Positions 34,501 to 61,500 are shown, counted from the first letter of the stretch. The stretch: DNA of 64,000 nucleotides from Octopus bimaculoides (GCF_001194135.2 NC_068982.1:128781649-128845648), one strand, 5' to 3'. Notes: generated by a model not told the origin, from the letters alone. A program made the numbers and translations.

Positions 34501-37500
34501 TACTTATGCTTTTTTAAAGTCTCGTACTTATTCTATTAATTTCCTTAGCTGAACTTCTAAGTTATAGGAACAGAGACAAACCAACATCGGTTGCTAAGCA
34601 AGAAGGCAGGGACAAACACAGGCACAAAGGTACATAAAGTTTTCATCTACCAAATTCACTCACAAAGCACTGGTTGCCCCAGGACTATAGTAGAAGACCC
34701 TTGCCCACATAGTTTCAGTGCAAGGCAAGCTTCTAAACCACACAGCCACGCTGGTACTTATGATCAAATTATATATGCATCAATTTCATTTAGATTAAAT
34801 TATATATATTAAGTAAAGAGACCAGAGATGAAGAAAAAAAGAGAAACATAAAGTAAACACATGGTTTTCTATTTTTGCCTCTTCTTTTTAAATATTATAT
34901 CTTAATTATATAACCATTATATAAATATGCAATAATCAAAGCAAAAGGAATAATATTTACTACTAACCAGACAACATTAGGCTTAGGTTTGCCGCTTACA
35001 ATAACTTCCATGCTGAAAGTTTCTAATTCATCAATTTCATAATTTTCAAGCTTTTTGATAAACTTGGGTGTTTCTTTCTTTTCTGAAATGTCCAAAAGAA
35101 AAGAATCTATTGAAAAAAAGTCTTACCTAGTCTATAAAAAAGTAAAGAATTATCAAATATCGCTTTGAAAAATAAATTTCTAGGCAACTTGTATCATCAG
35201 CCTTATCATCATCATCATTATTATCATCATAAACATTGTCAATATCATTGCTATCACAACCATCATTGTTATCATCGTTATCTTTGTTTTAATGTCCATA
35301 GTTTTGCTTGAGTCAGAATTAATTTACTGAAGTAGACTCTCTACAGCTGGGTGCTCTTCCTGTCACCAACCCTCACTTGTTTCCAAGCAAGGTAATATTT
35401 CTTTATGACAAGACATGTTTCCATGGAAGATTGGAAATGAATGATCCATTTGTATGATGGTGACACTCATTCACAACTATCATGTGATGTCAAGATAAGG
35501 AGATACAAACACACATGCACAGAGTTTCTATCTACCAAATCCATTCACAAGGCTTTGGTTGACCTGAAGTGATAACAAAACGCTCTTGCTTGTGGTGCTA
35601 CACATTGAAATGGAACACAAAGCAACATGATTAAGAACTGAACTTCCTAATCATGCACAGTCGTACCTGCACCTATACAGCTATACTTGTATGTCAGAAT
35701 TAAGTTTATCTGCCATTAATTCATAAATATCAAAAACAAAATATAGAGGTTTTATTTTGTTTCACTTTTGCATAGAACTAGATTTAGTTACCTTCTACAA
35801 TAAATTCTCCTTCAGTTTCTGCTTCACCAGCAATATTTTTGGCAACAGCTTTAATAATGCCTGCATCTTCAAGTTCAACTGCATCAATCCTTAGTGTATG
35901 CTGAATGTCTGAGAAAGCTTTTTTAGTTTCAAGTTTGAACCTTTCATTAGATTCAATAAGCTTTTGATTTATATACCAGGTAACCTCAGGCAAAGGTATA
36001 CCTTTAACACCAACATCGACGGAAAATGGCCGCCCTTCCCTGCAGTCTTTCTTTGTGAGTTTCCTTGTAAAAACTGGTGCCTCTGTTTTTTCTAGAAGAA
36101 ATAAAAAAGACAACAATTAACATTATTAAAGGAATTCTTATGAAAATATGAAGTTCAAAAACAAACATGATTTGCAAGCATTATAATATACTATGGTAAA
36201 ATATTTTGATTAAATTTCTTATAATTTGACTTATTACTCAAAAAATAATTACCTTCAACAGTAACTGTGCATGTACATTCTGCAGTTCCAACAGCATTTG
36301 TGGCAACACATTTATATGTTCCACTTTGATCTTTCTTTGTTTTGGGAAGTTTTATAATGCAAGTAGTGCCATCTTGAGATATTTTGATGTCAGCAGTTGA
36401 TGTAATTGGTTTATCATCCCTAAATAACAAATTTAAATATGGTTAGTATTTATAATGAAGCCATTTATGTGTTCAGTTACACTCATCAAAATTCTTTAAC
36501 TCTAGTCCATGGAAAGGCTGGTGTTTCTTTCTCTTATATCATTACTATCACTGTAATCTGTTGCTTCTAAAATCTATTCTTTGAGTATTTCTTCTAATAA
36601 GATGGTAAATTTTCCATCAAATTGAGATTCTAAAGATAGAAGGCTCACTTATTAAGTAGGCCTAGTGAATACATATAACTTTTATAATGTATTTTAAAAA
36701 GATAGTTCCTATTTTTAAAATAATAAAAAAAATAGTAGCTATTTATGAAATACTTACTTAAACCATTTGATTGTGGGTTTCGGATCACCAGTTACTTTAC
36801 ATTTTATTTCAAAAGGTTGATCTTCCATAATTTTCTAAAATGAAATGACAGTATATATATGTAAAAACTCTTCAAATTTAAACATTATAAAGAATATCTA
36901 AATCCCAAAGCAATAAATAACAGTGGAGTTTAAAAAATGAAAAATGGCTTACAATTAATGTAAATGACATTTTATCTTCTGATGTAGTACAAAAATGAAA
37001 TATATAATAATTCCTTGGGTATACATTACAATTATAGATTTCAAAGTTTTAGGTATTTTTGTGTCAGGTACACTTTGATATTATTGTATTCTATGTATTT
37101 CTATATTCTCATATACTAGGAATATATTTATTGCCTGTTGTGATATACATGTAGAAATACTGTTTTATTTGTTCATTATATAATAAAAGAACTTTGAATT
37201 GTGAAAAGATGAGATGGGACTGCAGCTATCATAGGATAATAGCAACCTCACTACTATTTAATACTATATTTGTGTGCACCATTGCAGCAGAGCCTGTTGT
37301 TTACAACTTGGGTTTAGCTACAACAAAATCTCATCCACACCAAAATTACACCCCTTTGATTTATTATTTCACAAATCGGACATCAATTGTGAAATCGAAC
37401 TTTCTAAACAAATCAAAGATCAATTGTGCAATTGAACTTTCTGAACAAACTTGATTATCTAAGAATGTAATATGTTCCAGTTGTATTTATTTATAATTTA

Positions 37501-40500
37501 ATTAAGAATATGTATGTGATTTAATCAATTTTCACAGACTACATTTACTACTATTAATATTTAATGATATCAGCTTCAATATCGAAATCAAATGGAAATT
37601 GTAGCTGTGAACCCCGTGCCAGTGGCATGTAAAAAGCACCATCCAAACGTGGCCAATACCAGTTCCTCTGGCCCCTGTGTCTGTGGCACATAAAAAGCAC
37701 CCACTACACTCTCGGAGTGGTTGGCATTAGGAAGGGCATCCAGCTGTAGAAACACTGCCAGATCAGATTGGGGCCTGGTGCAGCCTCCTGGCTTTCCAGA
37801 CCCCAGTCAAACCATCCAACCCATGCCAGCATGGAAAATTGACGTTAAACAATGATGCTGATGCTGATAATGATGATGTAAAAGCTTAATAACCATTCTA
37901 ATAATAAAGTTGCTTGATTTTTCATAGTATTAATGTTTGAAGCCTTTTAATTTTACTATTCCTCATTGTCACTAAAGAACAGAGCTAAATTTATTCAAAT
38001 CGGTTGCCACTTGTATAAAAAATACAAATTTCAGAAATAATGTAATATCAAATATTGATACTCATGAAGCAATTATAATGAATGGATGTTTTTTCACTTA
38101 CTTTCAAAATCTACATAGCAATGATATTCTCATTGCTCATGTAGTAAATGAAATTAAAGTGAAATTTATTAATCTATAACTGAATGCTTCCTTTATATTC
38201 TGATGTGTTATTTCATATAATATGATAGGATGATTAAGAGAAAAAGATTTCCAAAACAAACAAAAATATATCTTACAGTAGATTCTGTGACATCTTCAAA
38301 CTTAGGTGGAATTTTAGCTTTTTCAACTGGTTCCTTCTTCTCATCTTTTGGTTTTTCTAAAATAATGATATGATACAGATATTATTATCATTATTAAATG
38401 ATAATAAAGTTTCACGATTTGTCATAGTTTGAATCACTTTAATTCTAATGCATATTTTTAAATCTCAGAATTAAGTTTTAAGCAAATTTTCACTTACATT
38501 TGAAATATGAAAAACCAAATTGAATTTACTTTTATCATACAACACATGAATCTATAACTTATTAAACAACAATATATTCTATAGGATTTAAAAAGAGAAA
38601 TTAAACTAGTAGATGTTATGGGGAAACATAATTGTCATCATTGTCATAACCATTGCAAAAAATTAAAAATAATAAACTTTTGAGAGTTAATGTTTGTTCT
38701 CCATCTTTTATATAATTGGTATATTACTAATTTTTATTATTCTTATTTACTCTACTAATCAAAATGATAAATGTATGCTAAGGATATCCCAAATACTGTT
38801 TATCAACTTACTACTAATTTATTATCTCAGTCTTTTGTTAATTTATTTATTTATTTTACTGAAGGTTAGTGTTATTTTACAATTAAAGGCAAGTTTCTAC
38901 AATAACTTTGAAATTATTGGATTCATCCCTAATTTACATCAAAGAATTCTTTATACCTGTCTTTCAACTTGTTATTTGTTATCTTTCACTAACCAAAACA
39001 TTCAATGCACTGCTATGATTCAGCACATTTTTTTCGCAGTTTTTTTTCTATTCATTCATTTCCATCAACTTTTAATATGAGGAGTGAAAGGTTAATAATC
39101 ACAATGGTTATGATTTCAATAATTCTACTCTAGATCATGAAGTAAATAACTATAAAACTTAGATAAATAGGAAGAGAAGAAAAATGTTTTGTCAAAGATA
39201 GATTTGTATATCATGGGTATTGTTCTCATCTCCCTATGATATAGACAGTTATCTGAATTTCCCCCTAAAAAGATAACCATTAATTTCCTTGGACTGAGGT
39301 GTTTATTTTTATTTAAAGAACACTATTCATGCTCAAAACTCCTCAGGCATATGAATTTCTAGGAATCTGAAAACTAAAAGCTTATTGTCTTTGTTAAATA
39401 GACAACTGAATAAAATACCAATAAAGTTGTTATTGTTTTTTAAACGCAACTTTAATTTTGGAAATAATATAACATCATCCCTTTAGTAATAATCCTACAC
39501 TACATGTACTATGCATAAGATCTCTAAAGTTATTATGCAATGTAAGTATGTTCTAGACTTTGATAGTATTGGTAATTTTGAATCTTTGTTTACTCAAATA
39601 TCGTCATAGAACACATTTCTAAACCATTTAAAATGCAAAAAGTGATTCTGAAAGGGAACAGATCATTATTAACAACAATTTTGACAAGATTAAGATTTGA
39701 GGGATTTCTACTGACCTTCAAGTGAAACGGTGGCTTCACATTCTGCAGAACCAGCAGGATTTGTGGCAACACATTTGTAAACACCAACTTCATTCTTGGA
39801 GAATTTGCTGGTTTTTAGTACACATACAGGGCCATCTTGTGTGAGCTTGGTAAGTGATGTTGGTTTAATTTCTTTGTTGTCTTTAAACCACTTAATAGTA
39901 GGTTTTGGTTCACCAGTTACCTTGCATTTCAGTTCCAAAACGTCATTAGGTTTAAGGGATACTGATTGGAAGATCTCTTCAAATTCTGGTTTCTTTTGCT
40001 CTGGCTTCTTTTCTTTTGGTTTTTCTTCCTCAAGTGTTATAGTAGCTTCACACTCAGCAGATCCAGCAGGGTTTGTAGCAACACATTTGTAAACACCAAC
40101 ATCATTCTTTGTGCATTTACTGGTTTTTAATATGCACACTTGGCCGTCTTGAGTAAGTTTGGTAATAGATGTTGGCTTAATTTCTTTGTTATCTTTAAAC
40201 CACTTGATGGTAGGTTTCGGTTCACCAGTTACCTTACATTTCAATTCCAAAATGTCGTTCACCTTGATGGTTGTTGAACTGAAGATCTCTTCAAATACAG
40301 GTTTCTTCTGCTCTGGTTTCTTTTCTTCTGGTTTCTTTTCCTCTGGTTTCTTTTCTGCTGGTTTTTCTTCTTCAAGTGAAACAGGAGCTTCACATTCAGC
40401 AGATCCAGCAGGGTTTGTTGCAACACATTTGTAAAGACCAATATCTGTCTTTGAAATCTTTGGTATTTTCAGAGTGCACTGTTGCCCATCTTGAGTTATA

Positions 40501-43500
40501 ACACTCTTAGATGTGTTTCTTATTTCTTTGCCATCCCTGATTATGAAACAAATAAAAATTAGATTAATAAAAATTTATCAGTACAAACTTATCATAGGAC
40601 TAATAAGCTCATAAAAAGCAGCAAGCAAGTGCTATAAGAAAGCACTGTGTATACTGTTGAGTGGTTGGCATTAGGAAACGCATCCAGCCATAGAAACCAA
40701 GCCAAAACAGACATTGGAGCATGATGCAGTCCTCCAACCTGTCAGATCCTGTCAAACCATCCATCCAATGTCAGCAACAGACATTAAGTGATGATGATGA
40801 TGGTGGCAGTGGTGAGTAAATAGGTGTTAAAAGGGTTACATATACTTACTTGAACCATTTCACAGTAGGCTTAGGTTCACCAGTAACTTTGCTTTCCAAC
40901 ACTAACTCTTCATTAACCTTCAGCACCTGAATCGTTAAAAGAAATTATTGATATTTATAAATTATTTTGAAGAAATTGTTAGAATGCTTTCTTCTAATTA
41001 ACTACTAGACTAATTGATAGTAGACATAATCACTAATTTGTGACAGAAAAGATCAATGGTGCCATTGATGTAATTGTTGTTCTTTTCTGCTTTAAGTTGC
41101 TGCTCCTAATGTCTAATATAATTTGTACTGAAACGTTTCAGCAGGTAATTAATAGGTTCAAGTTGGAAGATATATATTCTAAAAAAAGTGGATAACAACA
41201 GATATTTTAAGACATAATTATACTACAATTATTTTAATTGATATATATATTGACAGAAACTATTAATTGAAATATATGTTAACATTTTAACTTAGTGTTA
41301 AAATTGCCAATATAATGGATACTTACGGAAGGTTGAATGACTTCTTCGAATTCTGGTTTTACTTCTGTTAAGATTGAAAATAGAAGTTTAATTACATATT
41401 ATTATTCCATTTTTTCATAATTTAACTTAAGCAAATCTAAAAGCTAATTGAATTTAACATATAAAATTTAAATAGTAGATTACATTCAAGCTTATAAACC
41501 TTCTTTAAACCAGGAAACACTTTATAACTCTGGATATGTAAAATGTAATAAAGAAACATCATTTTTGTGTACATATATAATTGATACTAAGAACACAAAT
41601 AATGTTCTTAATTATAATTTTATTTGAATTTTTTGAAACATTTATTCTACTCTCTTTGAGCCAAAAATTTTCTATCTTGTGCAACATATTTAAGATGGAA
41701 TCTATGTAATATGCAAGATAAATCATGATATGACATATTCAATTAAAACCATATAATTATAGTACATGTTACTGTATTGTTTAACTCCAGGTCAGCCCCA
41801 ATTAATCAGGCCTATGATTAAAGACAATCCAGCATCAAGAAATTTTTTGTTGGGGGTAGGCAGTAGACTACATTATTCAATGTAATTTTCTTTAAGACAG
41901 TAGGATTTAAATTGAGGGATATTTGGCTGCTATTCCCAGCAAGATGAGCAATCACACGAAGTTCCCTTATTGGCTTGCAATGTACTACTATTTTTTATAA
42001 ATAGTATGGAATATGTGAAATATAATAATATTAATATAATACCAATATGATACTACAGACCTGCATTTCTAGAATATGGCCACATATACTCTCAAGCCTT
42101 ATTCTGTAGTATATAATTGAAAATAAAACTTCAAATAAAATACAGCAAGATGTAATCATTACAGTATATTGTAACTTACCATAGATATTAACAGGTGCTT
42201 CACATTCTGCTGAACCAGCGGAATTAGTTGCAACACATTTGTATACACCACTATCAGGTTTTGCAAATTTTAGTATTTTCAAAATGCAAACATCTTCCTC
42301 TGTTGAGATTTTATATTTGGAAGAAGTCTTTATTTCTTTGCCATCCCTATAAATAAAAATAAAGCCATTATATGAAAATATGTTATATTTCTTGTAGATT
42401 ATGTTTGTATCATATATTAATTAAATCTGCATTTTTTATCACTAGGAAGCTGAAAACTTCAATGGTAAAATAATTTATCATTCTTCCTTATACTCGTAAA
42501 TTTTGTTTCATGCATTACAACTGATAAAGGTATATTAAATAAATAAACATGTGATTTTATACATATCTTATATAAATGATGTACCTTTTGTTTTACAACC
42601 GTTGTTCAAAACTAATAACCATTTCTAACAATTTTGATTTAAAGATTTGTTTTTTCATAGACTAGTCAGGGAAAGAACGTTAACGACTATGACTTTTACA
42701 AGCCTTCCATGGCTGGTCACATTTATGTGGTTGATTTATCTCTTCAGTAAAATTATTGCTGGGATAATAATTTTAGAGAGCTGAGATTCTGGGCATGATG
42801 CAGAGGACAAAGTGTTTTGTATAAGTCCTAGAAAGTGATATACATTAAGGCTGATAAGAAGAATAATGAGAAGGTGGAGAGGCTATGCAGATAGCTTGTT
42901 TAGAAGAATGTATAGGATGTTTGTGTGCAGTAGCCTCACAGTCTCATGCATATGAGCAATACTCTGCTGTAGGTCTTAGTTGAGCCTTGAAGAGTATGAG
43001 TGATTAATCAGGGCTGAAACATTTTCTGACCCTAAAAAAGAAACTGATTCTTTATGACACAATTCTGGCAAAGCTTATATGTGGGTTTACTATGAATGAT
43101 GATCAGGGACTGTGAAGCTTAGCACTTGAAACAACTTTGTAAATTTTGTAAAAGATTGTTCATAATTAATAAGAGTGAAAAATAAACTTGTTTCCTGTTA
43201 TGCATGACAGAGATGAATATAGTTACACCTTTCTATAGCCCTTATACATTTGGGACTCTTATATTGAATTATCTTACTCCTGTTTTTGTACTTATTAAAG
43301 CATGTAAAAACTATAAACGTTGTTGACTTACTTGAACCATTTCACTGTAGGTTTGGGTTCACCAGTTACTTTACATCTCATTTCTACCTCTTCATCAGCT
43401 TTCTTTGTCTAAATTTCAAGCAAATATAAATTCCATGTATTATAAAATTCATAATATTAGTAGAATACAACAAATGTTAAAAAAATTACTGAAATAATGT

Positions 43501-46500
43501 ATTCCTTAAAGAAATTTAAATATAAATGCAAATAAGAATTATTTCAGTGAAACTCTTGTTAAGTTTTTAATGGTGATATAAATCATTTTTAGCATGCACT
43601 AAATATATAAATATATGTCATTAATGATAATTATCAAAGGAATTTCACTTACCACTGGCTGCAATACTTCTTCAAATTCTGGCTTGCGTTCTGCAAATAA
43701 TATTATTTAAATAAATAGATTGAATGGATTGTCATTGCTGAAACACTTCTTTAAGATTAGTATCTCAATATTTCATCACCATATATGCTCTGAAAATGCA
43801 TCTATACTACCTACCAATCAATAGCTTTGAAATTGAGGCATATAAGATTTCAAAGTGGGCTCATGTTTAATTGCCATGCAATTAATCTAAGTAATAATAA
43901 TCTTTAAAATTTCTTCAAATAAAATTATGTTTAATTGGTTTTAAATTTGGGTTTTAAATTTTGGTACAAGGCCATATATTTAATTAAATATCAACAAATA
44001 TATTAATTACAAAATTCATTATAAAATTAATCAAATATTAACAAATATATTAATTATAAAATGAACTAACCATAGAGAACAACAGATGCCTCACACTCAG
44101 CAGTGCCAGCTGAGTTTGTAGCAACACATTTGTATATTCCAGCCTCTGCTTTGGTAAACTTAGGTACTTTCATGTGGCATACTTTATCATCCATGGTAAT
44201 TTTATTCTTGGAAGTATTCTTAATTTCTTTGTTATCTCTGGAAAAAATTATTAAAAATTAGAAGTTAGTAATTATTAATTTTTATTGAATAATCGAAATA
44301 TATATTTCTTACTTGTAAGAAGCATTCCTGTAAATAAAGCAACTGCATTTGCTCCTAATCTTGCTTGCAGATTTACTCTGCACACATACAACTAAACTCT
44401 TGAATAAATTTCCTGAATACTTGTTCTCCTATGTCTCGATTGAGTGTTGTCTTATTTTTGAGAACTTTGGTGAAAACAATGTGCTTTACCTTGACATTAG
44501 TAAGACATTTTACTATATCTTCCATGAAAATCTCCAAGTCAAGTTACTAGCCTACATGCTCCATCAAACTATCATCTCTTGAATCAAATGTTTTCTGTTA
44601 GACTCCATTACAGCAGTCAACTCTATAATTATGGTATACTTCAAGACTCTGTTATGTCTTCAAATCTCTTCTTTTTATACATTAATAAACAATTCCCTGC
44701 TACGTGTAGAAACATACACACATTTACATACAAGATGGTACTGAGCCCCTCACTCTTCCTTAAGCTTTAGTACATTGGTACTATCAACATCAACCCTAGA
44801 ACCTTACATTAAACTGCCACTTCATTCATAAGCAGCAACTTTGAAATCAACTTGCAATGGAAATATGATGACAGTCTGTATCAACAGCAAGTAAGCATAA
44901 ATACTACATGTATGAAGGAAAGAAACATGCAGAACACTCTCCTTGTACGTAAATACTACACAGCTAAACAAATGTTCAGCTGACCCATGAGAGAGCATCT
45001 ACATGCCCACTCTGTCTGCTAGAAATTGTAGCTAATTTTTCTATTACTCTTGCACTAACATCATTTAAAAAGACAACATTGCTGGGCTGATGCTGCAATG
45101 ACTTACTCACCTACATGCTGCTTCTTTTATCTAGGCTTTTACTGCTGCTACAAAAATTTCTGCTCCTATAATGTTTCAAGATGTAGCACATTCACACAAG
45201 TCCTCACTCAAAGAATTTTCCCATCTGTTCCTAAATATATCCTATGTCTCATTACAATTATATTTTTGTTACTTTAGAGAACAATGGAATGTTTGCACAT
45301 AACTTCAATCCCCAGTTAAGGCTTTCAAATAAATAACTATAGAATTATCTAAATTATTTATGTTTCAGATACTCTGAATCACATTGTGCTTTATACACAT
45401 GTGTCTTATTTACTATTACACCTTGGAATGTTATGAATCTAAATGCTGCATAGACCAACTAAATAATAATTCAAAAAAATAAATGCATACATATCTATCA
45501 TTTATACATACGTTCATACATATATTGATAAAAAGTGTATATACTTACTTAAACCATTTAACAGTTGGTTTGGGTTCACCAATTACTGTGCACTTAAGCT
45601 CCAATGGTTCATCAGCCTTCAGAGTCTGAAAAATTTAGATATGAATGTATTACTTTATATTTACACATATTTAAATAGGTTAACATTGACAAAGAATGGT
45701 GCCCTTTTAATAAAGTTCTGTGTGAACAAAATTATTTGCACCAAGGTAGAAATGGTCTCTTATTATTCTTACTATCAGTTACAAATCATTTATTAATATG
45801 TACCCAAAGTGTAATAGTAACAAGATATTAAACTGACAGAAAAAAATCTGTAACCTACCACAGGTTGAAGAATTTCTTCAAATTCTGGCTTTTGCTCTAG
45901 AAAAATTAAAAAATTAAATACATTAATTACACACATTTACATAATCTGGCATGCTTTAAATCCACAGGATAATATTCAATCCAGAATAATCTAAAACTTA
46001 GAAACACTGTATTCTGTAGTTCTGTTATCCTTTTACATTACTAACAAATATCTCCCCATTATATACATGGCAAAATTTCAAGAGATATCAGAAAAAACAT
46101 ATACCTAAAAAAACCATAAAGATTTATTTTAATGTAACTATTACATAAATCACATATACACACATGCCCATGTGAATTAACTGCTAAAACATTATGTAAA
46201 TTTCAAAATTTCCCTAAAGATATCTAACTATATTTTTATACAGAAACATTCCTCCCCCAACCTTTTTTTTTTTTAAGAGGAAGAATCATATATCTTACAT
46301 ATGTTCATATGGTAAGAGGAGATCTATATTTTACATGTTATATATATAAAATTCTTTCCACTTTTTAAAAAATTGTATGACATATATATCTTAATAATAG
46401 AGTGGATAGATGGATTTTCGAAATTTTAATTTTTGGAGACAAACTTCTCAAGTGTTTTCAAAGGTCCATCCATCTAAAAGACTCATGTAAAAGAATTTAG

Positions 46501-49500
46501 CAAGACATATAGAAATTCTTTTGGTGTTTTTCCTTTATTTTATGTTTTCTCAGCCCTGAGGCTAATAATTCTTTAATCTTACCATTTAAAAAGAACATTG
46601 TAATTCAAGAAAACATCTTTGTTTACAATATATACTAACCAAATAGATTGATTGTAGCTTCACATTCTGCTGAGCCAGCTGAATTAGTAGCAACACATTT
46701 GTATATACCAGCTTCTGGTTTTGTAAATGTAGGTATTTTCAAGGTGCAAACATTTTCTTGGCGAGTAATTGGAGATTTGGAAGTGTTTTTAATCTCCTTA
46801 TCATTTCTGTAATATAAGAAAAAAAAATCACAAGATATATTAAAATGAAATAAATAAAATTTTACAAAATTAATTATATGAAACCCCACATTCATTTATC
46901 TTGCTCACATTTAAAGAATCTTTACATCTGGAATACCAATGCATTATTGATATTTATTTAAATTTACATTATTACATGGTAATGAATTTTAGCTTATATA
47001 TGAGAAATATTCTTTTGACAATGTTAACTCCAGTTGTTACTGGTAAAGAGTAGTTATTAACTATTATGGTAAAACTTTAGCTATGCAGCCCATAGTATAC
47101 TAGCAAACTTGGTTCTTCTTTCTGTTTTTTTTTATGCTATTTGATATTCGACTGACTGAAACAGATATAATTTCAAGAACATATAGGGAGAACTGTTCAA
47201 TTCTACTAGTTCTATTTATATAAAAAGGTAATAAATCAAGCAGAAAAGCCTTAAGTTTGTAACAAAGGAAATATCAGATGTTGTAATCACTGTATGGTTT
47301 ATATAACAGTACAATTTCTTTTAAGAAGGAACAGTGTAATGGCATTTGCAGGCCCTATGAAACTGGTGAGATTGATATGGTTAACTTTCTTTATCTTTCA
47401 TCTTTAGCTTGTTTCAGTCATTAGACTGCAGCCATGCTGGAGCACTGCCCTGAAGAATGTTTAGTCAAAGATATGAAACCCAGTACTTATTTTTATTTTC
47501 TGAGTGTGGTACTTATTTTATTAGTCTCCTTTTGCTAAACTGCTAAGTTATGGTGACATAAACACACCAGCATCAGCTGTTATGTGGTGCAGGGACAAAC
47601 ACAGACACAAAGATACACACACACATATACACAGTGGGCTTCTTTAAGTTTCCATCTACTAAATTGACTCACAAGGCTTTGGTTGGCCCAAGACTATAGC
47701 AGAAGACACTTGCCCAAGTTGCCATGCAGTGAGATTGAACCTAGAACTACGTGGCTGGAAGAAAGCTTCTTACCACACAGCCATGCCTGCACCTACTGAA
47801 AGAAAAACATGTTCAGGGATTTCAATCTAGATAAGAATGTCTGACTTACTTAAACCATTTAATTGTTGGTTTAGGTTCACCAGTGACTTCACATGTCAGT
47901 TCTACAACTTCATTTGTCTTCACAGTCTAAAATGTAAAATATTAAGACAATTTAAATATAATTCAAATAAATAATAAATTTTATCATATTAAGAATAATT
48001 TGAATAAATATAGACAAAATATTCTACTTACAGCTGGTTCAAGGACTTTAACAAATTCTGGAGCTTGTTCTAAGAATTCAATTAAAAGAGTATCATATTA
48101 GGTTTTTAAATATACATATGCATCAATCTGAATTAAACTTTATAAATAAATATGAATTTTATGTAATTTTTTAGAATATTACTTTCTTGACTGGAATATT
48201 ATTTTACCTGAATATCATTAATATGAATGATACACTTATGAATATACTTATAATACACTTTACTGTCATGTATAGAGCAATTATGCCAAAGCAAAAATGT
48301 ATACAAGATAGTCGTAATTCAAAATGCAATTTTTAAAATGAACATGTTTTGTTTCTATTTTAGAAAATAGAATTAACCATTAGACTTTTTTTTAAAAACC
48401 CACTTTTTTACCGAAAAAAAAGACCCAAGATTTTACATACCAAATAAGGTAACTGAAGCTTCACAACTTGTTGTTCCTGCAGGATTAGTTGCAACACATT
48501 TATAAAGGCCTGCTTCTGCTTTAGTAAATTTAGCCATTTTCAAAGTGCATACATCTCCCTCTTGTGACATCTTATATTTAATAGTTGGCTTAATTTCAAC
48601 ATTGTCTCTGTAATGAAATATAAAGAGATATTTCTTTTAATATTTATCTCAATCTTATGGTGAGCTCTAAATGCAAAAAAAATTACAAAATATGAAATTA
48701 AATTTCATCCAGTTTTCTGAGAATACAAGTAGACATTTTACTTCAACATAAGATAAAATTTAAAGAATCTAAAATAACAAAAGCACAAAAATCACAATTT
48801 TCCTCTATTATGTTCTAATATTGTCATGTATTGCAAAATCATTTTCTTGCAAACACAAATATTTTATATATAGTTCAGCCTCTTAAAATCCATTTAATCC
48901 TTTCTTTTTAATAAGTGATCCAAATTTAAAGAAAGTAAGAAGATTATTACTAACTGAAAAATATAAGCAGATTACATAACTGAACAGAATTGCTTTTGTT
49001 GTGTTTCTGAGCAGAGCAATTTATTCAGTTCATCTGGAAATGCTATCAGTGATAGGTTAGCATCCTATCCAAGGAGTAATGTCCTAACTTAAATTGGATG
49101 GTCATCTTCATTGGGATCAAATCATGATGCTTAACCAAACCAACATATCACAAATATTGTCCTGAAACTATATAAGGGTGCTGGAACAATAGCTTGTTCC
49201 TTGCATTTGACTGGCCACTTTCATGGCAGAGATTTGTTTTAAATAGCTGACTGAGCTATTCAATATCAACATTCCTTAAAAAGTTAAATATAAGATATGT
49301 GCACCATAGATATTAACCAGAATTTTTTTAAATGTTGTATATTATTTGCAATCAATTTCTCAATAGAGATAATAGTAAAGTGTTTCTAGCATTAAACTTT
49401 TTTTAAATATCTTAATGTAATGGAATTTTAAATAAATATATCCTAATAATTACCATTATGCACATAAATATTTTAAGAAACAAAAAACTTACTTGAACCA

Positions 49501-52500
49501 TTTGATGGTCGGTTTGGGTTCACCAGTAACTTTGCACACCAAATTCAAACTTTCTTCATTTTTGATGCTCTGAAATGAAAATTAAAAATCAATGAATAAG
49601 CGTCTAACTATAAAAAGCAAAACTCAGATTTTACCAACATGTAAAAAAAATAATAAAAGGAAAAAAAAATTCATGATTCGGAATGAAATACTTACAGTTG
49701 GTTGAAGAACTTCTACAAATTCAGGTTTCTTCTGTTCTGGTTTGGCTTCCTTTGGTTTGTCTTCCCCAAGTGTGATAGTAGCTTCGCATTCAACTGAACC
49801 AGTGGAATTTGTAGCAACACACTTATAAACACCGACATCATTCTTAGTGAATTTAGTTGTTTTTAATACACATATAGTACCATCTTGAGTGATTTTGGTA
49901 AGTGTTGTTGGCTTAATTTCTTTGTTGTCTTTAAACCACTTAATGGTAGGCTTTGGTTCGCCTGTTACCTTACATTTCAGTTCCAATGGTTCATTCAATT
50001 TGATAGTGGCTGATGTGAAGATTTCTTCAAATTCAGGTTTGCGTGTCTTAGGCTTTTCTTCCTCAAGTGTAATAGTAGCTTCGCATTCAACTGAACCAGT
50101 GGAATTTGTAGCAATACACTTGTAAACACCCACATCATTCTTAGTGAATTTACTGGTTTTTAGAGTACATATAGTGCCATCTTGAGCAATCTTGGTAAGT
50201 GATGTTGGCTTAATTTCTTTGTTGTCTTTAAACCACTTAATGGTAGGCTTTGGTTCGCCTGTTACCTTACATTTCAGTTCCAATGGTTCATTCAATTTGA
50301 TATTGGCTGATGTGAAGATTTCTTCAAATTCAGGTTTGCGTTCCTTAGGCTTTTCTTCATCAAGTGTTATTGTTGCTTCACATTCAACAGAACCAGTGGA
50401 GTTTGTAGCAATACACTTGTAAACACCCACATCATTCTTAGTGAATTTGTTAGTTTTCAGAGTGTATACTGAGCCATCTTGAATAATTTTGGTGAGAGAG
50501 GTTTGTTTGATTTCCTTGTTGTCTTTAAACCACTTAATGGTAGGCTTTGGTTCACCTGTTACCTTACATTTCAGTTCCAATGGTTCGTTCAATTTGATAT
50601 TGGCTGATGTAAAGATTTCTTCAAATTCAGGTTTGCGTTCCTTAGGCTTTTCTTCATCAAGTGTAATAGTAGCTTCGCATTCAACAGAACCAGCAGTGTT
50701 TGTGACAACACACTTGTAAACACCAACATCATTCTTTGTGAATTTATTGGTTTTTAAAGTACACACTTCACCATCTTGAATAATTTTGGTAAGTGTGGTT
50801 GGCCTGATTTCTTTTCCATTCCTAAAAAAATATATAATTTTCTTGTATAACTACATAAACTATAATTTTCTTACATAACTACATAAGATATAGGAATATA
50901 AAGACTATATATCTATAATAAATATTAATTTATTTCAAATGGTAAGCAAATGAGTTTTGTTTTCCCATTATTAAATTTTTAAGAGAATATATGTCAATTC
51001 TAATATAATTATTAGTCATTTTCTCAGGGCTATTCATCACTGAGGAGGCTAAATCAGGCCAAAACACCAATGTCTGATGATCCCCTGATGTCATTTTTAA
51101 GACTCAAATTCCCTTAAGAGAAGTTTCTCTGAAACAAAATATTACAGCTAGAACTGTTCTATACTTGTATAAACACAGTAACTGTCACACACACCATTAT
51201 TTTAATCTAATGCTGTTTCAAGTGTGTATATTTAATTTAAACTTGTCCAGCTTCAGCACAAATCAATAACTGTTTTGTTTCTGATTTCTATATTGGAACT
51301 GGCATCTGATGATTTGCTGATAAGGAGTCTCTCTAAGATAGCTAGTGCCATTCTCTTTTTCTATGCACATTTTGTTATACATATAGTTATTTTAATTTAA
51401 TACTGTTTCAAGTATGTATGCTGAGAGAAGTTATAGCCTTAAAACAATTATCAGGTTTTATGAAACTTTGAATGATGAAACTGGACTAGATTACAAACAG
51501 AAGACTTTTATAACCAAATGTATTCATAGGGTCGGAATGAAAATACATTTTAAGAAAAAACATGAATGACAACAGACACTAACCATGAAAATAAATTATA
51601 AGTTGATTATATTTGAAGAAAAAACCTTCCTATTTCATTCATTATCATAATTCTCTTTAAATAAGTGTTGGTTGTGTTTATTCTTTATATCTTAATATTT
51701 CTATTCTTTCAAGTCAGAATTGAGATTGAAACTTTAATTTAAATTCTTGTAAAAAGCTACATTAATAAGATGATACTCACTTAAACCACTTGACAGTTGG
51801 CTTTGGTTCACCACTGAATTTGCACTTCAATTCCATACTGTCACTAACTTTGAAAGACTAAAAAAAAAAATAGACATAATATATAAATACAAATATAACA
51901 TAATGATAATACAATAAATATAATCAATAAAGAAATTATTAAATTGTGAAGAAGTTTTAAAATGTTTATAATGTTACTTACGGCTGAGTTAAATACCTCT
52001 TCAAGGACTGGTTTCTTCTTTAGGTCCTTTTTCTCTGTAAATTTACAAAGTGTATAAGTGTGAGAAAGCAATTGCAAAGCTATGAAAGAAATTAACATCA
52101 AATTGTTCATCATAAAATACAGAAAATTTATAATAATGGAAGTTTTTGCTGCTTCCCAATTCAGAGTCAAACAAAAGCATTCATACTTGTTTGGAAATAG
52201 ATGAAACATACCTGTGACTTTGACTTTACATGAAGTTGAAGACGAACCAACATTGTTAGTTGCTTTACATGTATATTCAGCAGTGTCTTGTTTTGTAACT
52301 TTATGGATGGTCATTGTATGAGTGGTTTCAGAACTTTCAATTGTGAAATGTTCAGATGGTTTAATTTGAACACCATTTTTGTACCTAGAAAGAAAGATGT
52401 TTAAACAGTTAATTTTTGTACGGGGTTATGAGTATCCACATTACTAAAAATATTATTAACATGAATGATTAAAGAATAAAAATGAAAACAAGAAAATATT

Positions 52501-55500: not shown

Positions 55501-58500
55501 AAGGCCTTTTGTCCATTTTGATTCTGTTAACCTCTGCCTCATGATGATGATGATGATGATACTTGCTTCTGATTTAGGCAGAAGACCAGCAATTTTGAGG
55601 TAGTTGATACCATCAACCATAGTACTTGACTGATATTTTATTTTGTTTATTAACCCCAGAAGGATGAAAGGCAAAATTGACCTTAAAGATATTTGAACTC
55701 AGAATATAAAGAGCTGGAACAAATACCACAAAGTATTTTTTTCCAGTATTCCAAAAGAGACAGTGAAAGAGGAAGAGAAAGAGGGAGTAGAGAGGACAAA
55801 GGAGAAGACTGGAGAGAAGAAGGAGAAGACTGGAGAGAAGAAGGAGAAGACTGGAGAGAAGAAGGAGAAGACTGGAGAGAAGAAGGAGAAGACTGGAGAG
55901 AAGAAGGAGAAGACTGGAGAGAAGAAGGAGGAGGAGAGTTACGGTGAACAATGATAATGATGATGGCAACAATGACAACCATGATGAAGACAATATCAAC
56001 AATGATGATGAGGAGGAGGAGGAGGAGGAAGAGTGGGGGGACAGCATACAGCAACTGTTTTTCTTTGAAGAGTTGCAGAAAAAAACTGATGAACTGCAAA
56101 AGATACAATCAAGATATTCATGATTGCATAAGAAAATATCTTGTTCAATAAATAGATGAGTTCAGTTTGATTTTTAAGTTTGAAGTGGATCAAGTCCTCT
56201 CCTAAAAAAATATAAAAAAGCTTTGTTAAAGAGATTATCATTTTTCAGATTATTAACCACTTATTTTAAAGATGAAAATAGTATTTTACAATATTTACAT
56301 CAGTTTCATCTCTGATCATCACCATAATGTGCACTCCAAGATTCAATTTGAATCTTTTTATAATTAATTTAGAAATAACAGCTGCTTTTTAGAATCCAGT
56401 CGAAGATGATGTACACAATTAGAGATATGATACCTGATGGCAGAGACCAAACCAATCACAGCAATGAGAATGCAAATATTACTGAAAATCATATTTAATC
56501 TCTAAAGATGTGGTTAATAGTCTAAAAAATAATAATTATATTAACTATTAATCTTAGAAATTTAGTAATTTAATCAAATATTTAGCAAAATTTGTTTGAA
56601 ATTATTAGAACCAATATTAAAAAAAGAAAAATATAATCATTTATAGAAAGCTGTCCATTTGTAATAAAAACTAAATCATAATATTCCTCCCGCTCTCTCT
56701 CTTTCTCTATCTTGAGCTTATGATCTCATTATCCCAGAGATTACATGGGTTTCTGAAGTGTTTAGTTGTCTGAGAGTACAAGACTACCTTCCTTTGAATG
56801 AGTTTCCAGTTCATTTGCGGGTTAATCCCTAGTATCTGCCCTAGTAGAGCAACAGAAAATGAAGTGCCTTGCTCAATGATACATGTCCACTGGTTTGGGA
56901 ATAAAACTCATGATTTAATGAATGTGAGGCTAATTCCCTAACCACCAAAGCACTTTCCTTCACCTGTGATAATATAGTCAGGAAAATAGAAGATAAACAA
57001 ACTATCGCGAAAGTGAAATCATGATGGCACCACTGTCCGAGCGTGATCGTTACCAGCACTTCCTGGCACTTGTGCCGCAGCGTCACGTTCCTGGCATCTA
57101 GTTTTCCAGTCCTCAGTCAAATCGTCCAACCCATGCTGGCATGGAAAGCGGACGTTAAACGATGACGATGATGATTTGTGAACTGCTGAAGTTTAATCCT
57201 GATAAGTTTTTCTTATACATATTATAAATCAATTAATTCATTACTATAGGAAAAAGAGAGGATAATTTACAAATGGAGAGCTTAAATCAGAATAAATATC
57301 TGCAATATATTTAAGATTTTAGTGGAGTGTTTAAGTTGAAGTAAGAGAGTAACAATCTTTTACATTTTCTTTCACTTGACAACCACCTGAACAACCTAAA
57401 AAATAATAGATGTGTCCATGAGTGTTATTCTTGGTACATATATTTATGTTCTCACTGAATAATTAAAAATACTGATTATTTAGCCATATATCATATATAA
57501 AATATACTAAAAGGAAACAAATATTAATCATGTTATCACAGTTATAAGAACAAATATTATTACCATTAATGTAGATAATAACAGATTTACCTCTTGTAAA
57601 ATGAAAGTGTCTTCAACAGTCACATCTTCAGAGGTATCAATACCAAATGATGCAGATAATTCTACATCTTCCTTAGATTTGTCTTCAGCTGGGAGAGTGA
57701 AAGACATATCTGTACTAACATCTTCTGCTGTTGGTTGTTGAAATATAAAGTCTGTTTCCACATCCTCAACTGCCATTTTCTTTGGTTTCTCCTCAAAGAC
57801 GAAGTCAGCTGAAATGTCTTCAACTTCTTTATCTTGTATTTCTAATTTGAAGGTTTCAGCAGTATCAACTGTGTCACGTGGTTTCTCTTCTTCAATCTGG
57901 AAAGCGACTTCAGTATCAACTGGTTTCTCTTCTTCAATCTGGAAAGCGACTTCAGTATCAACTGGTTTCTCTTCTTCAATCTGGAAAGCGACTTCAGTAT
58001 CAACTGGTTTCTCTTCTTCAATCTGANNNNNNNNNNNNNNNNNNNNNNNNNNNNNNNNNNNNNNNNNNNNNNNNNNNNNNNNNNNNNNNNNNNNNNNNNN
58101 NNNNNNNNNNNNNNNNNNNNNNNNNNNNNNNNNNNNNNNNNNNNNNNNNNNNNNNNNNNNNNNNNNNNNNNNNNNNNNNNNNNNNNNNNNGTGGTTTCTC
58201 TTCTTCAATCTGGAAAGCGACTTCAGTATCAACTGGTTTCTCTTCTTCAATCTGGAAAGCGACTTCAGTATCAACTGGTTTCTCTTCTTCAATCTGGAAA
58301 GCGACTTCAGTATCAACTGGTTTCTCTTCTTCAATCTGAAAAGCTACTTCAGTATCAACTGGTTTCTCTTTTTCAATCTGGAAAGCGACTTCAGTATCAA
58401 CTGGTTTCTCTTCTTCAATCTGGAAAGCGACTTCAGTATCAACCGGTTTCTCTTCTTCAATCTGGAAAGCAACTTCAGTATCAACTGGTTTCTCTTCTTC

Positions 58501-61500
58501 CAACTTGAAAACTGCTTCAGTATCGAGTGGTTTCTTTTCAGTACTATCAAGCATTAAACTAAACTCAGCATCTTCAGCTGTTTGAACTGTAGGGGTTTCT
58601 TTTTCCTCCTCCAGCTTGAAGCTTGCATCAACAAAGGTTTCCTCTTCTGTAAGGCTAAATTCAGCTTCAACATCTTCAGTAGGTTGTTTTTCAGTTATAT
58701 CTGTTTTGTCTTCCAATATTTCTACTGTACTCATTTCTGCAACCTGAGTTTTGTGTTTATCAGTAATTGATTCAGAAGCAGTCACTGTATCCTTTTGGCT
58801 CTTACTGATTTCTGAAACCATGTCTTGGGTATCTGTGCCAGACAAAGTACCAGTTTGTATAACAGTTATATCAGATTGTGAAATATTAAGAGGTAGTTTT
58901 TGTTTATCATCCATAAGAGTTACTTTTTCAAAAGGAATATCAGAAATGTCAGATAAACCATTTTCTGATACCTGTTCTTGTACAAAGCCTACCATAGATT
59001 TGGGGATATCAGTCAAAGTTGCTTTACTTTTCTCTGGTTTCTTTTCAGAATCAACAACACTGACTTTTTCAACACTGACATCAGTAATATCAGCAAGACC
59101 ATTTTCTGTCAAATGTTCTTGCACAATTCCAACCATAGATTTGGGGATATCAGTAAGAGTGGCTTCACTTTTCTCTGGTTTCTTCTCAGAATCAACAACA
59201 CTTATTTCTTCTACACTGACATCTTTGATATCAGATACAATATTTTCAGTGACGTGTTCTTGAGCTACTCCAACCATAGATTTGGGGATATCAGTAAGAG
59301 TGGCTTCACTCTTCTCTGGTTTCTTCTCAGAATCAACAACACTTATTTCTTCTACACTAACATCCTTGATATCAGATACGATATTTTCAGTGATATGCTC
59401 TTGGGCAACTCCAACCATAGATTTGGGGATATCAGTAAGAGTGGCTTCACTCTTCTCTGGTTTCTTTTCAGAATCAACAACACTTATTTCTTCTACACTA
59501 ACATCCTTGATATCAGATACAATATTTTCAGTGATATGCTCTTGAGCCACTCCAACCATAGATTTAGGAATATCAGTAAAGGTGGCTTCACTTTTCTCAG
59601 GTCTCTTTTCAGAGTCAACAATGCTTACTTTGTCAACACTTACATCAGAAATATCTGAAAGTCCATTTTCTGTCAAATGCTCCAGCACAACACCAACCAT
59701 AGATTTAGGGATATCAGTAAGAGTGGCTTCACTCTTTTCAGGTTTCTTCTCAGAATCAACAACACTTATTTCTTCTACACTGACATCTTTGATATCAGAT
59801 ACGATATTTTCAGTGATGTGCTCTTGGGCCACTCCAACCATAGATTTGGGAATATCAGTAAGAGTGGCTTCACTTTTCTCTGGTTTCTTCTCAGAATCAA
59901 CAACACTTATTTCTTCTACACTGACATCCTTGATATCAGATACGATATTTTCAGTGATATGCTCTTGGGCAACTCCAACCATAGATTTGGGGATATCAGT
60001 AAAGGTGGCTTCACTTTTCTCTGGTTTCTTCTCAGAATCAACAACACTTATTTCTTCTACACTAACATCCTTGATATCAGATACGATATTTTCAGTGATA
60101 TGCTCTTGGGCAACTCCAACCATAGATTTGGGGATATCAGTAAGAGTGGCTTCACTCTTCTCTGGTTTCTTCTCAGAATCAACAACACTTATTTCTTCTA
60201 CACTGACATCCTTGATATCAGATACGATATTTTCAGTGATATGCTCTTGAGCTACTCCAACCATTGATTTAGGAATATCAGTAAAGGTGGCTTCACTTTT
60301 CTCAGGTTTCTTTTCAGAGTCAACAATGCTTACTTTGTCAACACTTACATCAGAAATATCTGAAAGTCCATTTTCTGTCAAATGCTCCAGTACAACACCA
60401 ACCATAGATTTAGGGATATCAGTAAAGGTTGCTTCACTTTTCTCAGGTTTCTTCTCTGAATCAACAATGCTTACTTCTTCTACGTTGACATCCTTAATAT
60501 CTGCAACAATATTTTCAGTTACATCTCCATGCATAATTGTAACCATAGATTTAGGCATGTCACCTAGACTGGCCTGACTTTTATCTACCTTTTTCTCTGC
60601 ATCAACAATACTTACATTTTCTAAAGTGACATCAGAAATTTCACTTATTCCATTTTCTGTTAAATGTTCCTGCATGATTGTTGTCATAGATTTTGGTGTA
60701 TCAATCAAATCTAATTGCTTTTCTTGTAATGATTTGGTATCAACAGATTCTAATGTTATTTTTGTCTCTTCTGAAAAGTCAGTGACAGTAGATTCTGATA
60801 TTCCAACATTTATGGATTCTGTTTTTACAAATGGAGCAGAAGTTATTTCCATTTTCTCTGTAGCAACTTCAGATATGATGTTTGGAGTTATACCTGCTGC
60901 ATCTTCTTCAGATGCAATATCTGAAAGTGCATCTAAAATTTCTTCTTCCATAATGTTAGCTTTTGTCAATACTTCTTCAGTTAGCTGGGAGCTGGTAGCA
61001 ACTTTTTCAACAATACTAGAAACAATATCTTTGGGTACATCATCTGTTTGTATATCAGTTGTAAATTCTTGAATACTTTCTGAAATTGTACCAGTTTCTT
61101 GCTGTATTTTGTCTTTTACAGTAACCTCCACAACCGATGGTTTATCAATTAATTCACTATCAATCTTTTGAGTTACTACAGATTCACTGATATCTGATAC
61201 AATATCTGATGAAACTTCATCACATACAATATCGGTCTGTATGACTGGAATTTCAGTTTGCATAGTTATTTCAGTTGCCTTTTCACTGATATCTTCTTGT
61301 TTTGCATCAAGAAGTTCCTTAGGAACAATATCAGTAACTAAACTACTTGGAGTTTGCTCTTCAACCAAATCACTTTGAATGCTCACTATCTTTGAAACTG
61401 TTGTATCAAGTGATTTTGGTTCAATCAAGAGGCTAGTAATATTTTCTTGTGTGTCTTCAGATACAATATCACTAATTTTATCTTCAATGACTGCTTCTTG

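What the first reader, a model, noticed from the sequence alone, without database searches (positions are those of the whole stretch)
36253..52034. One Ig module, two gene structures: 38/77/167-nt exon triplets versus intronless 297-bp repeats
Seen: 12 paralogous Ig modules. The spliced modules use introns at identical sites (phases 1, 0, 2); modules 6-8 are exact 38+77+167-nt triplets. Modules 2-4 and 10-11 lack all three introns, sit inside exons 6 and 20, and resemble each other (KDNKEIKPTS...TKNDVGVYKC, EEKPK linker) more than their spliced neighbours 1-10 kb away. Inference: precise multi-intron loss, as expected from recombination with a cDNA, then intra-exon tandem duplication and block duplication or conversion.
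Basis: partly seen in the sequence, partly recalled or inferred. Interest (0 to 1): 0.75.

Follow-up and report, generated by a model that had tools for sequence, protein, structure and literature searches.

The report
Intron loss in titin-like Ig array
Twelve copies of one immunoglobulin-type module lie in a row in a giant muscle-spring (titin-family) gene, and five of them have lost all their introns exactly and then multiplied inside two large exons; this is a clean example of a known process, not a new one.

Summary
On the minus strand, 20 exons with GT-AG borders (52034-36253) join into a 1201-codon frame without stops that encodes 12 I-set Ig modules. Spliced modules use three exons (a 38, b 77, c 167 nt; intron phases 1, 0, 2). 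Modules 2-4 and 10-11 have no introns and lie in exons of 1126 nt and 821 nt.

The direction of change is intron loss. The Aplysia counterpart of module 12 has the same intron sites and phases, and its c exon is also exactly 167 nt. The intron-free modules group with module 1 (99.7% bootstrap), which still has its a|b and b|c introns. Module 1's exons (53+77+167) add up to exactly the 297-nt intron-free unit.

A related species has the same intron-free 821-nt exon between spliced neighbours, so this is not an assembly artefact. The event is old: paralogue dS is 0.86-0.99 against orthologue dS of 0.12-0.30.

Tandem duplication inside the exons is shown directly. A spliced-RNA or cDNA template is the best explanation for the exact loss of at least four adjacent introns, but it is inferred. 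The site lies far from the 3' end of a muscle gene, which does not fit the classical version of that model.

This is a good new example of a known process, of moderate interest.

The parts
51982..52034 (-). exon 1a (53 nt = 38 + 15), linker plus start of Ig module 1
   Evidence: ag/gt borders; in frame in the joined CDS
51781..51857 (-). exon 1b (77 nt)
49696..50821 (-). exon A (1126 nt): c part of M1 (50821-50655), intron-free M2, M3 and M4, and a part of M5 (49763-49696, 68 nt)
   Evidence: Single open frame. TRF gives 297 nt x 3.6 copies.
50358..50654 (-). intron-free module M2 (297 nt)
   Evidence: Aligns without gaps to the spliced M1 cDNA of 53+77+167 nt
50061..50357 (-). intron-free module M3 (297 nt)
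   Evidence: 90% identical to M2 and 94% to M4
49764..50060 (-). intron-free module M4 (297 nt)
49493..49569 (-). exon 5b (77 nt)
48441..48607 (-). exon 5c (167 nt)
48032..48069 (-). exon 6a (38 nt)
47850..47926 (-). exon 6b (77 nt)
46640..46806 (-). exon 6c (167 nt)
45859..45896 (-). exon 7a (38 nt)
45549..45625 (-). exon 7b (77 nt)
44071..44237 (-). exon 7c (167 nt)
43653..43690 (-). exon 8a (38 nt)
43332..43408 (-). exon 8b (77 nt)
42180..42346 (-). exon 8c (167 nt)
41327..41364 (-). exon 9a (38 nt)
   Evidence: Conserved with the same splice sites in the related species.
40850..40926 (-). exon 9b (77 nt); the first Ig cysteine is replaced by serine
39716..40536 (-). exon B (821 nt): c part of M9 (40536-40370), then intron-free M10 and M11
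   Evidence: Single open frame. TRF gives 312 nt x 2.0 copies. The same exon with the same borders is present in Logan contigs L002-L004.
40028..40369 (-). intron-free module M10 (342 nt; a part 98 nt, containing a 15-nt EKKPE-type repeat)
   Evidence: TRF gives 15 nt x 4.3 copies at 40300-40364.
39716..40027 (-). intron-free module M11 (312 nt; a part 68 nt)
   Evidence: There is a 15-nt indel in its linker between species.
38277..38356 (-). exon 12a (80 nt)
36758..36834 (-). exon 12b (77 nt)
36253..36419 (-). exon 12c (167 nt); M12 is the counterpart, by position, of the single Aplysia module

Best explanation
The 12 modules are tandem paralogues of one I-set Ig domain. They sit in the spring part of a titin-family muscle gene that runs along the minus strand of the whole window. 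Upstream are PEVK-like repeats, and downstream are more Ig domains and then fn3 domains.

The ancestral module was coded by three exons (a|b|c). The Aplysia counterpart and M12 still have this structure.

Proposed order of events:
1. Whole three-exon units duplicated long ago. This gave the 'S-type' modules M5-M9 and an 'F-type' founder whose a exon was 15 nt longer (53/77/167). M1 is the surviving spliced F-type module.
2. In a run of F-type modules, at least four neighbouring introns (c|a, a|b, b|c, c|a) were removed exactly. The most likely route is recombination or break repair using a spliced transcript of the gene as template, either as cDNA or as RNA.
3. The intron-free unit then multiplied in place by unequal crossing-over or slippage. 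This gave 297 nt x 3.6 copies in exon A and 312 nt x about 2.5 copies in exon B. The linkers grew in 15-nt steps.

The two blocks are each other's closest relatives. Both are old, are under purifying selection and are kept in a related species.

What is shown and what is inferred:
- Shown: the exon anatomy, the ancestral state, the F-type clade, the in-exon tandem arrays, the age relative to one species split, and the selection.
- Inferred: the RNA-derived template, and whether block B arose from the same event as block A.
For: - Exon model and open frame.
- Outgroup: the Aplysia counterpart has the same three intron sites and phases, and a 167-nt c exon.
- With the Aplysia root, M12 is the basal module and the F-type clade is derived (86.6% support in the protein tree).
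- The F-type clade including the spliced M1 has 99.7% bootstrap. M1's a+b exons alone also group with the F-type modules (67.8%).
- 53+77+167 = 297, and M1 aligns with M2-M4 without a gap across both former intron sites. All 12 cores align without gaps.
- Tandem arrays are reported by TRF.
- The a-part lengths 38, 53, 68 and 98 differ by 15-nt units. A 15-nt indel separates the two species.
- Homology between blocks A and B runs through the linkers to 8 nt from the a5|b5 intron. The last 37 nt of a5 match the S-type exon 6a. A tract end therefore lies inside an exon.
- The surviving paralogous introns have only 0-2 nt of junction microhomology, mean 0.74. That gives little substrate for exact deletion without a template.
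- dN/dS is 0.06-0.2.
- The related species has spliced 9a and 9b and the same intron-free exon B. Orthologue dS is 0.12-0.30 against paralogue dS of 0.86-0.99 in both species.
Against: - No direct trace of reverse transcription exists or could be expected.
- The lost introns lie in the middle or 5' part of a very long gene, with at least 36 kb of the gene downstream. The 3' bias of the classical poly(A)-primed cDNA model is therefore not met.
- From general knowledge, a sarcomeric gene is not expected to be well expressed in the germ line, which the model needs.
- An intron-free-only clade is unresolved (20-25% bootstrap), so one event cannot be told apart from two.
- Aplysia exon b lies in an assembly gap. 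Its two flanking introns are inferred from the a-exon donor and the c-exon acceptor, which lie 2.9 kb apart.
- Only one outgroup and one related species could be examined.
- Exon A could not be checked in the second species.
Confidence: 0.75

Rival explanations
1. Stepwise genomic deletion. Each intron was removed separately by an exact deletion (end joining or microhomology-mediated repair) without any RNA-derived template. The intron-free unit then duplicated.
For: Such a mechanism is described for animals (PMC3698931, listed). Once one intron-free unit existed, duplication would explain all the other missing introns. Only about four deletions are therefore needed.
Against: Four neighbouring introns of 105-1442 nt would each have to be cut out to the base. 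The alignment to the spliced M1 has no gap at either internal junction. The surviving paralogous introns offer only 0-2 nt of junction microhomology. No partly de-intronised module exists among the 12, or in the related species.
Confidence: 0.1
2. Intron gain. The intron-free module is ancestral. One copy gained three introns and that copy then spread.
For: Other Ig domains in the same gene are single exons, for example Ig13 at 36116-35787 and several between 29 and 10 kb.
Against: The Aplysia counterpart has the same three sites and phases and a 167-nt c exon. M12, the basal module, is spliced. M1 lies inside the F-type clade and is spliced. The spliced copies are the older ones, with saturated dS and no intron homology left.
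Confidence: 0.03
3. Assembly artefact. Transcript sequence, or a collapsed repeat, was built into the genome assembly.
For: The assembly has N gaps (58026-58191 and about 13.5-14.5 kb). The copy number of a 297-nt repeat with runs of 100 identical bases could be misjudged.
Against: Both large exons are flanked by ordinary introns with splice sites. Three independent Logan contigs from another species carry the same intron-free exon B between introns that align at 87-90%. The copies differ by 6-13%, enough to assemble.
Confidence: 0.02
4. Foreign donor. The F-type modules came from a processed copy of another titin-like locus and were pasted in.
For: The F-type modules are clearly set apart from the S-type modules. 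No intron homology flanks either block.
Against: A spliced F-type module (M1) sits in place next to block A. It has the same 53-nt a exon length. The 5' part of the linker in spliced exon 12a matches the F-type linkers. No second locus could be searched.
Confidence: 0.05

Closest known systems
Intron loss by recombination with a reverse-transcribed spliced transcript (the cDNA model). The abstract of PMC2614967 calls it the most popular model. A newer relative is break repair templated by transcript RNA (PMC12065846).
   Same: The introns are removed exactly, several neighbouring introns go together, the frame is kept, and the tract ends lie inside exons.
   Different: The site is not near the 3' end of the gene, and the gene is a muscle gene. 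The loss hit only some members of a paralogous array in one gene, so lost and kept states lie side by side. It was followed by tandem growth inside the exon.
Tandem Ig segments of the I-band spring of vertebrate titin. The best solved relative is titin I65-I70, PDB 3b43.
   Same: I-set Ig modules in series next to a PEVK-like segment. The module array grew by tandem duplication of genomic units. From general knowledge, the introns between modules are phase 1, so whole modules can be skipped in frame.
   Different: From general knowledge, vertebrate titin mostly uses one exon per Ig domain. Here the module is split into 38/77/167-nt exons or fused into exons of several modules. The modules are joined by short linkers rich in E, K and P that vary in 15-nt steps.
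Aplysia californica gene model P0005 ('myopalladin, partial', an automatic name)
   Same: It is colinear with the window from M12 through the next three Ig domains, at 47% identity. Its M12 counterpart has the same intron sites and phases and a 167-nt c exon.
   Different: Within this partial model, only one module of this structure was identified. The two Ig domains upstream differ: one has an intron at another site, and the other's gene structure could not be read. No intron-free array is seen. Ig13 is split in Aplysia but is a single exon in the window.
Ig-linker modular proteins of invertebrate muscle, such as Drosophila kettin/sallimus and crayfish I-connectin. These are recalled from general knowledge and serve as a lead only.
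   Same: Long rows of Ig domains joined by short linkers, with elastic repeat regions nearby.
   Different: Orthology was not tested here. Linker lengths and gene structures were not compared.

Membership tests
cDNA/RNA-templated (reverse-transcriptase-type) intron loss | The intron is removed exactly, with no bases lost or added | tested here: met
   M2-M4 align without a gap to the spliced M1 (53+77+167 = 297) across the former a|b and b|c sites. All 12 cores align without gaps.
cDNA/RNA-templated (reverse-transcriptase-type) intron loss | Neighbouring introns are lost together | tested here: met
   Ten consecutive intron sites are empty in exon A and six in exon B. At least four neighbouring losses are needed before duplication can explain the rest.
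cDNA/RNA-templated (reverse-transcriptase-type) intron loss | Losses are biased to the 3' end of the gene | tested here: not met
   At least 36 kb of the same gene, with many introns, lies downstream of exon B in the window.
cDNA/RNA-templated (reverse-transcriptase-type) intron loss | The ancestral state had the introns (loss, not gain) | tested here: met
   Aplysia outgroup. M12 is basal and M1 is spliced inside the F-type clade.
cDNA/RNA-templated (reverse-transcriptase-type) intron loss | The gene is transcribed in germ-line cells, and a reverse transcriptase or RNA-templated repair acts there | not testable with these tools
   No expression data are available.
Titin-family giant sarcomeric protein (spring region) | Tandem I-set Ig domains | tested here: met
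   Pfam I-set, E = 2e-23 to 2e-24 and 2e-16 for flanking Ig domains. The best PDB match is titin I65-I70.
Titin-family giant sarcomeric protein (spring region) | Low-complexity elastic repeats (PEVK-like) next to the Ig rows | tested here: inconclusive
   An exon longer than 3.9 kb holds 47-residue x 11.7 and 14-residue (PVDTEVAFQIEEEK) repeats. No Pfam PEVK-type hit was found. The composition is only suggestive.
Titin-family giant sarcomeric protein (spring region) | Mixed fn3/Ig region and a C-terminal kinase | tested here: inconclusive
   fn3 domains are present at 9814-9497 and 7253-6936, and more are seen by eye. Any kinase would lie outside the window. Titin, twitchin and projectin cannot be told apart here.
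Tandem array growing by unequal crossing-over, with partial homogenisation | Head-to-tail copies of constant period, with identity patterns that do not fit simple duplication | tested here: met
   TRF gives 297 nt x 3.6 copies with no indels. Within block A the a+b parts differ at 1-4 of 113 sites, while the c parts differ at 16-35 of 167 sites (Fisher p = 2e-5 to 2e-3). Between blocks there is no such contrast.

The most novel reading that the evidence does not exclude
One template derived from spliced RNA may have done two things at once. It erased the introns, and it carried F-type modules to a second, non-allelic place about 10 kb away in the same gene (ectopic 'retro-conversion' between paralogous modules).

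This would explain three things:
- Blocks A and B are each other's closest relatives.
- The five S-type modules between them were not duplicated.
- No intron homology flanks either block.

The tract ends would lie inside exons: the 3' third of c9 leans towards c10/c11, and a5 is part F-type and part S-type.
Probability: 0.2. Interest if true: 0.55.

Novelty: new member of a known kind. Interest (0 to 1): 0.35.

Why it matters
Intron loss is usually inferred by comparing species. Here one gene holds the kept state and the lost state of the same three introns side by side, in paralogues of the same module. A dated outgroup, a spliced member of the affected subfamily (M1) and a related species anchor the comparison. 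The locus is therefore a handy natural control for work on how introns are lost, and on what happens to an exon array afterwards.

For muscle biology, it shows how the exon layout of a spring region can harden. Three to four Ig domains become one exon that cannot be skipped alone without shifting the frame. The number of domains and the linker length can then change by simple slippage, in 297-nt, 312-nt and 15-nt steps.

None of this changes current views. It is a well-documented example.

Tried and rejected
- Intron homology. I looked for it between modules and around the two blocks, to detect segmental duplication. Only a few tens of bases beside some exons match, plus one 171-nt match between non-corresponding introns that is probably a dispersed repeat. 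This was not informative.
- Chimeric c9. Its last 67 nt differ from c10/c11 at 8 sites, against 17-21 sites for the S-type modules. Its first 100 nt are equally far from all. This 3' part is conserved in every comparison, and the informative-site pattern is mixed. I treat it as suggestive only.
- Segment borders. In some searches they were 3 nt off. I recomputed them with the right borders, and the conclusions did not change.
- Protein searches for cephalopod counterparts. The first search gave only a marine transcript, P0001, at 56% identity, with no DNA. The second gave mollusc transcripts. The third found P0155, which led to the related-species contigs.
- Exon A open reading frame. An exact look-up found nothing. 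Exon A was therefore not found in any other species. Short-read graphs may break in its 297-nt repeat (my inference).
- Profile search of 1.84 billion representatives. Giant multi-Ig proteins from unrelated animals filled the list, and no F-type relative was seen among those I read.
- Literature searches. None turned up a description of this locus. A search for the SRA run number did not identify the related species.
- Source organism. It could not be verified. The nearest annotated relative is a gastropod.
Full report
**What is there.** The window is AT-rich (about 30% G+C). One very long gene on the minus strand fills all of it. Read 5' to 3' along the gene, it contains:
- An exon longer than 3.9 kb, with 47-residue and 14-residue tandem repeats rich in E, K, P and V (58-62 kb).
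- An Ig domain I call M0.
- The 12 modules of the finding (52034-36253).
- Four conserved Ig domains, a charged linker region and about a dozen further Ig domains.
- A mixed fn3/Ig region from about 10 kb down to position 1.

The modules are Pfam I-set domains (E = 2e-23 to 2e-24). Their best solved relative is the titin I-band segment I65-I70 (PDB 3b43). I call the gene a titin-family giant muscle protein. Titin, twitchin and projectin cannot be told apart from this window. The source organism could not be verified with the tools at hand.

**Checking the observation.** A tblastn search with one module finds all 12 copies. I fixed each exon border by its splice sites. All 19 introns are GT...AG. 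The 20 exons join into a 1201-codon frame with no stop.
- Spliced modules use exons a, b and c of 38, 77 and 167 nt. M6, M7 and M8 match these sizes exactly.
- M9 has 38 and 77, M5 has 77 and 167, M12 has 80/77/167, and M1 has 53 and 77.
- Intron phases are 1 (c|a), 0 (a|b) and 2 (b|c).
- Exon A (50821-49696, 1126 nt) holds the c part of M1, three 297-nt units (M2-M4) and the 68-nt a part of M5.
- Exon B (40536-39716, 821 nt) holds the c part of M9, then M10 (342 nt) and M11 (312 nt).
- Tandem Repeats Finder reports 297 nt x 3.6 copies with no indels, and 312 nt x 2.0 copies.

Linker-type exons 1a and 12a are longer than 38 nt. The two large exons also take in parts of their spliced neighbours. 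The two blocks end at different intron sites.

**Relations among the modules** (identities; whole-module figures for M2-M4, M10-M11 and M12):
- M2-M4 are 87-94% identical.
- M10 and M11 are 82% identical.
- Blocks A and B are 76-80% identical.
- The spliced M5-M9 are 63-72% identical to each other.
- M12 is about 60% identical to everything else.

Neighbour-joining trees rooted on M12 give a clade of M1, M2, M3, M4, M10 and M11. I call these F-type, after the EEIF motif. Bootstrap support is 99.7% on 280 nt, 95.4% on the c part and 67.8% on the a+b part. M1 still has its a|b and b|c introns, and it groups with the F-type modules in all three exons. A clade of the intron-free modules alone gets only 20-25% support. 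It is neither supported nor contradicted.

**Direction of change.** Protein search found an Aplysia californica gene model, P0005, and its genomic locus L001. Downstream of M12 the two genes are colinear, domain by domain, at 42-56% identity (47% overall). The Aplysia Ig just before that block is therefore the counterpart of M12.
- Its a exon starts after a phase-1 intron. It ends in phase 0, two residues before the conserved methionine (M of MEQKP in Aplysia, MEDQP in the window), as in the window.
- Its c exon starts with the last base of the lysine codon after W-F (phase 2) and ends in phase 1. It is exactly 167 nt.
- Exon b falls in an N gap of that old assembly. Its two flanking introns are therefore inferred from the a-exon donor and the c-exon acceptor, which lie 2.9 kb apart.

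With the Aplysia module as root, M12 is the basal octopus-side module and the F-type clade is derived (86.6% support). The three-exon state is thus older than the split between gastropods and the window's lineage. The intron-free state is a loss.

A second, independent argument comes from exon sizes. M1's exons are 53+77+167 = 297 nt, exactly the intron-free unit. The spliced M1 sequence aligns with M2-M4 without a gap across both former internal intron sites. The extra 15 nt of the F-type linker therefore existed before the introns went.

**Not an artefact, and old.** A third protein search found P0155. This is an open reading frame from three Logan contigs (SRA runs SRR11869390, SRR11869391 and SRR11869384). 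The contigs align with window 41893-38380 across exons and introns, with introns 87-90% identical. They come from a related species that I could not name.

In that species exons 9a (38 nt) and 9b (77 nt) are spliced at the same sites. Exon B is intron-free with the same two borders. The only length difference is a 15-nt indel in the M11 linker.

Synonymous divergence between the species is 0.12-0.30. Between M10 and M11 it is 0.86-0.99 in both species. The loss, and the M10/M11 duplication, are therefore several times older than that split.

Within the window:
- dS is 0.16 for M3-M4 and 0.47 for M2-M3.
- dS is 0.7-1.2 between blocks.
- dS is saturated among the spliced modules.
- dN/dS is 0.06-0.2 throughout, so all copies are working coding sequence.

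**What happened after the loss.** Within block A, the a+b parts of M2-M4 differ at only 1-4 of 113 sites, while the c parts differ at 16-35 of 167 sites (Fisher p between 2e-5 and 2e-3). Comparisons between blocks show no such contrast. This points to later homogenisation of part of the unit, or possibly to fast change in the first half of c.

The a-part lengths are 38, 53, 68 and 98 nt. They differ by one, two and four 15-nt EKKPE-type units, and the two species differ by one such unit. The short linkers therefore grow and shrink by slippage.

Homology between the blocks runs through the linkers to 8 nt from the a5|b5 intron. The last 37 nt of a5 match the S-type exon 6a. a5 thus looks like a joint between an F-type linker and an S-type a exon.

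The 3' third of c9 is closer to c10/c11 than to any S-type module. That stretch is conserved in all comparisons, however, so I rate this as suggestive only.

**Mechanism.** At least four neighbouring introns (105-1442 nt in the surviving copies) were removed to the base. No half-way module exists among the 12, or in the related species. The surviving paralogous introns have only 0-2 nt of microhomology at their junctions.

This pattern is what the cDNA-recombination model predicts (abstract of PMC2614967). It is also what repair templated by transcript RNA would give (PMC12065846). It fits a series of template-free deletions less well (PMC3698931).

Against the classical form of the model, the site is far from the 3' end of a very long gene, and a muscle gene is not an obvious germ-line transcript. 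I therefore hold the direction (loss) at about 0.9, the RNA-derived template at about 0.6, and a single event for both blocks at about 0.5.

How F-type modules came to lie on both sides of five older S-type modules is open. An unequal crossover would have duplicated the S-type modules as well. Ectopic conversion fits better, but it is untested. The donor could be a genomic copy or a spliced-RNA-derived one.

**Function.** In the spliced part of the array, a whole a-b-c triplet is 282 nt between two phase-1 introns, so it could be skipped in frame. Exon A runs from phase 2 to phase 0, and exon B from phase 2 to phase 1. Neither can be skipped alone without shifting the frame (arithmetic). Intron loss has thus tied three to four Ig domains into fixed blocks of the spring. 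Whether that matters for muscle mechanics cannot be judged here.

**Novelty.** Three literature searches found no description of this locus. The processes involved are all known: exact loss of neighbouring introns, tandem duplication, and partial homogenisation. This is a clear, well-anchored new example, not a new kind of thing.

Noticed in passing
window 58018-61953 (minus strand), with an N gap at 58026-58191: One exon longer than 3.9 kb holds a 141-nt (47-residue) repeat x 11.7 copies and a 42-nt (14-residue, PVDTEVAFQIEEEK) repeat with at least 12 copies, interrupted by an assembly gap. It looks like a PEVK-type elastic segment, but no Pfam family of that kind matched.
   Followed up: partly
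window 40300-40364; a parts of M1-M5, M10 and M11; L002 near 2030: Linker lengths between modules differ by 15-nt (EKKPE-type) units: 38, 53, 68 and 98 nt. The related species lacks one unit in the M11 linker.
   Followed up: yes
window 53557 region and 52383-52243 (M0); 35095-34961 with 33614-33447; 32982-32866 with 32700-32530: M0, Ig14 and Ig15 each have a phase-2 intron inside the conserved tryptophan codon. That is exactly 6 nt upstream of the b|c intron site of the 12 modules, which has the same phase. This could be intron sliding or separate origins.
   Followed up: partly
window 36116-35787 compared with L001 16326: Ig13 is a single exon in the window. Its Aplysia counterpart is split by an intron in the tryptophan codon. 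This may be another intron loss on the window's lineage, or a gain in Aplysia.
   Followed up: no
window 40926-40850 (exon 9b); L002 about 1130-1206: Module 9 has serine where the other 11 modules have the first Ig cysteine (LVLESKVTG). The related species also has serine there.
   Followed up: partly
window 37715-37882 and 40659-40820: A 171-nt match at 74% identity links two introns that do not correspond (12a|12b and 9b|c9). It is probably a dispersed repeat.
   Followed up: no
window 50563, 50266, 49969, 40228 and 39916 regions (b parts of M2-M4, M10 and M11): All five intron-free modules code the K-V pair of CKVTG as AAG GTA AC. That reads like a strong splice donor (AAG|GTAAC). Most spliced modules use other codons there, such as AAA GTT or AAA GTA. 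Whether it is ever used as a donor is unknown.
   Followed up: no
window 9814-9497, 7253-6936, 5734-5387, 1714-1379, 1000-587 and 355-2: fn3 domains are interleaved with Ig domains at the 3' side of the window. Two were confirmed by Pfam. The same gene therefore continues into a thick-filament-type region.
   Followed up: partly
window 55799-55930 and 15313-15446: There is a perfect 21-nt x 6.3 copy repeat in an intron. There is also an 18-nt x 7.4 copy repeat inside a 407-codon stop-free stretch on the minus strand (16429-15209), whose status as an exon is unclear.
   Followed up: no
protein P0001 (marine transcript catalogue, no DNA): A transcript from an unidentified marine animal carries four modules of this family, at 56% identity, with periods of 97, 97 and 94 residues. 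They cluster with each other and not with the F-type or S-type modules. The array may have expanded or been homogenised separately in that lineage.
   Followed up: partly
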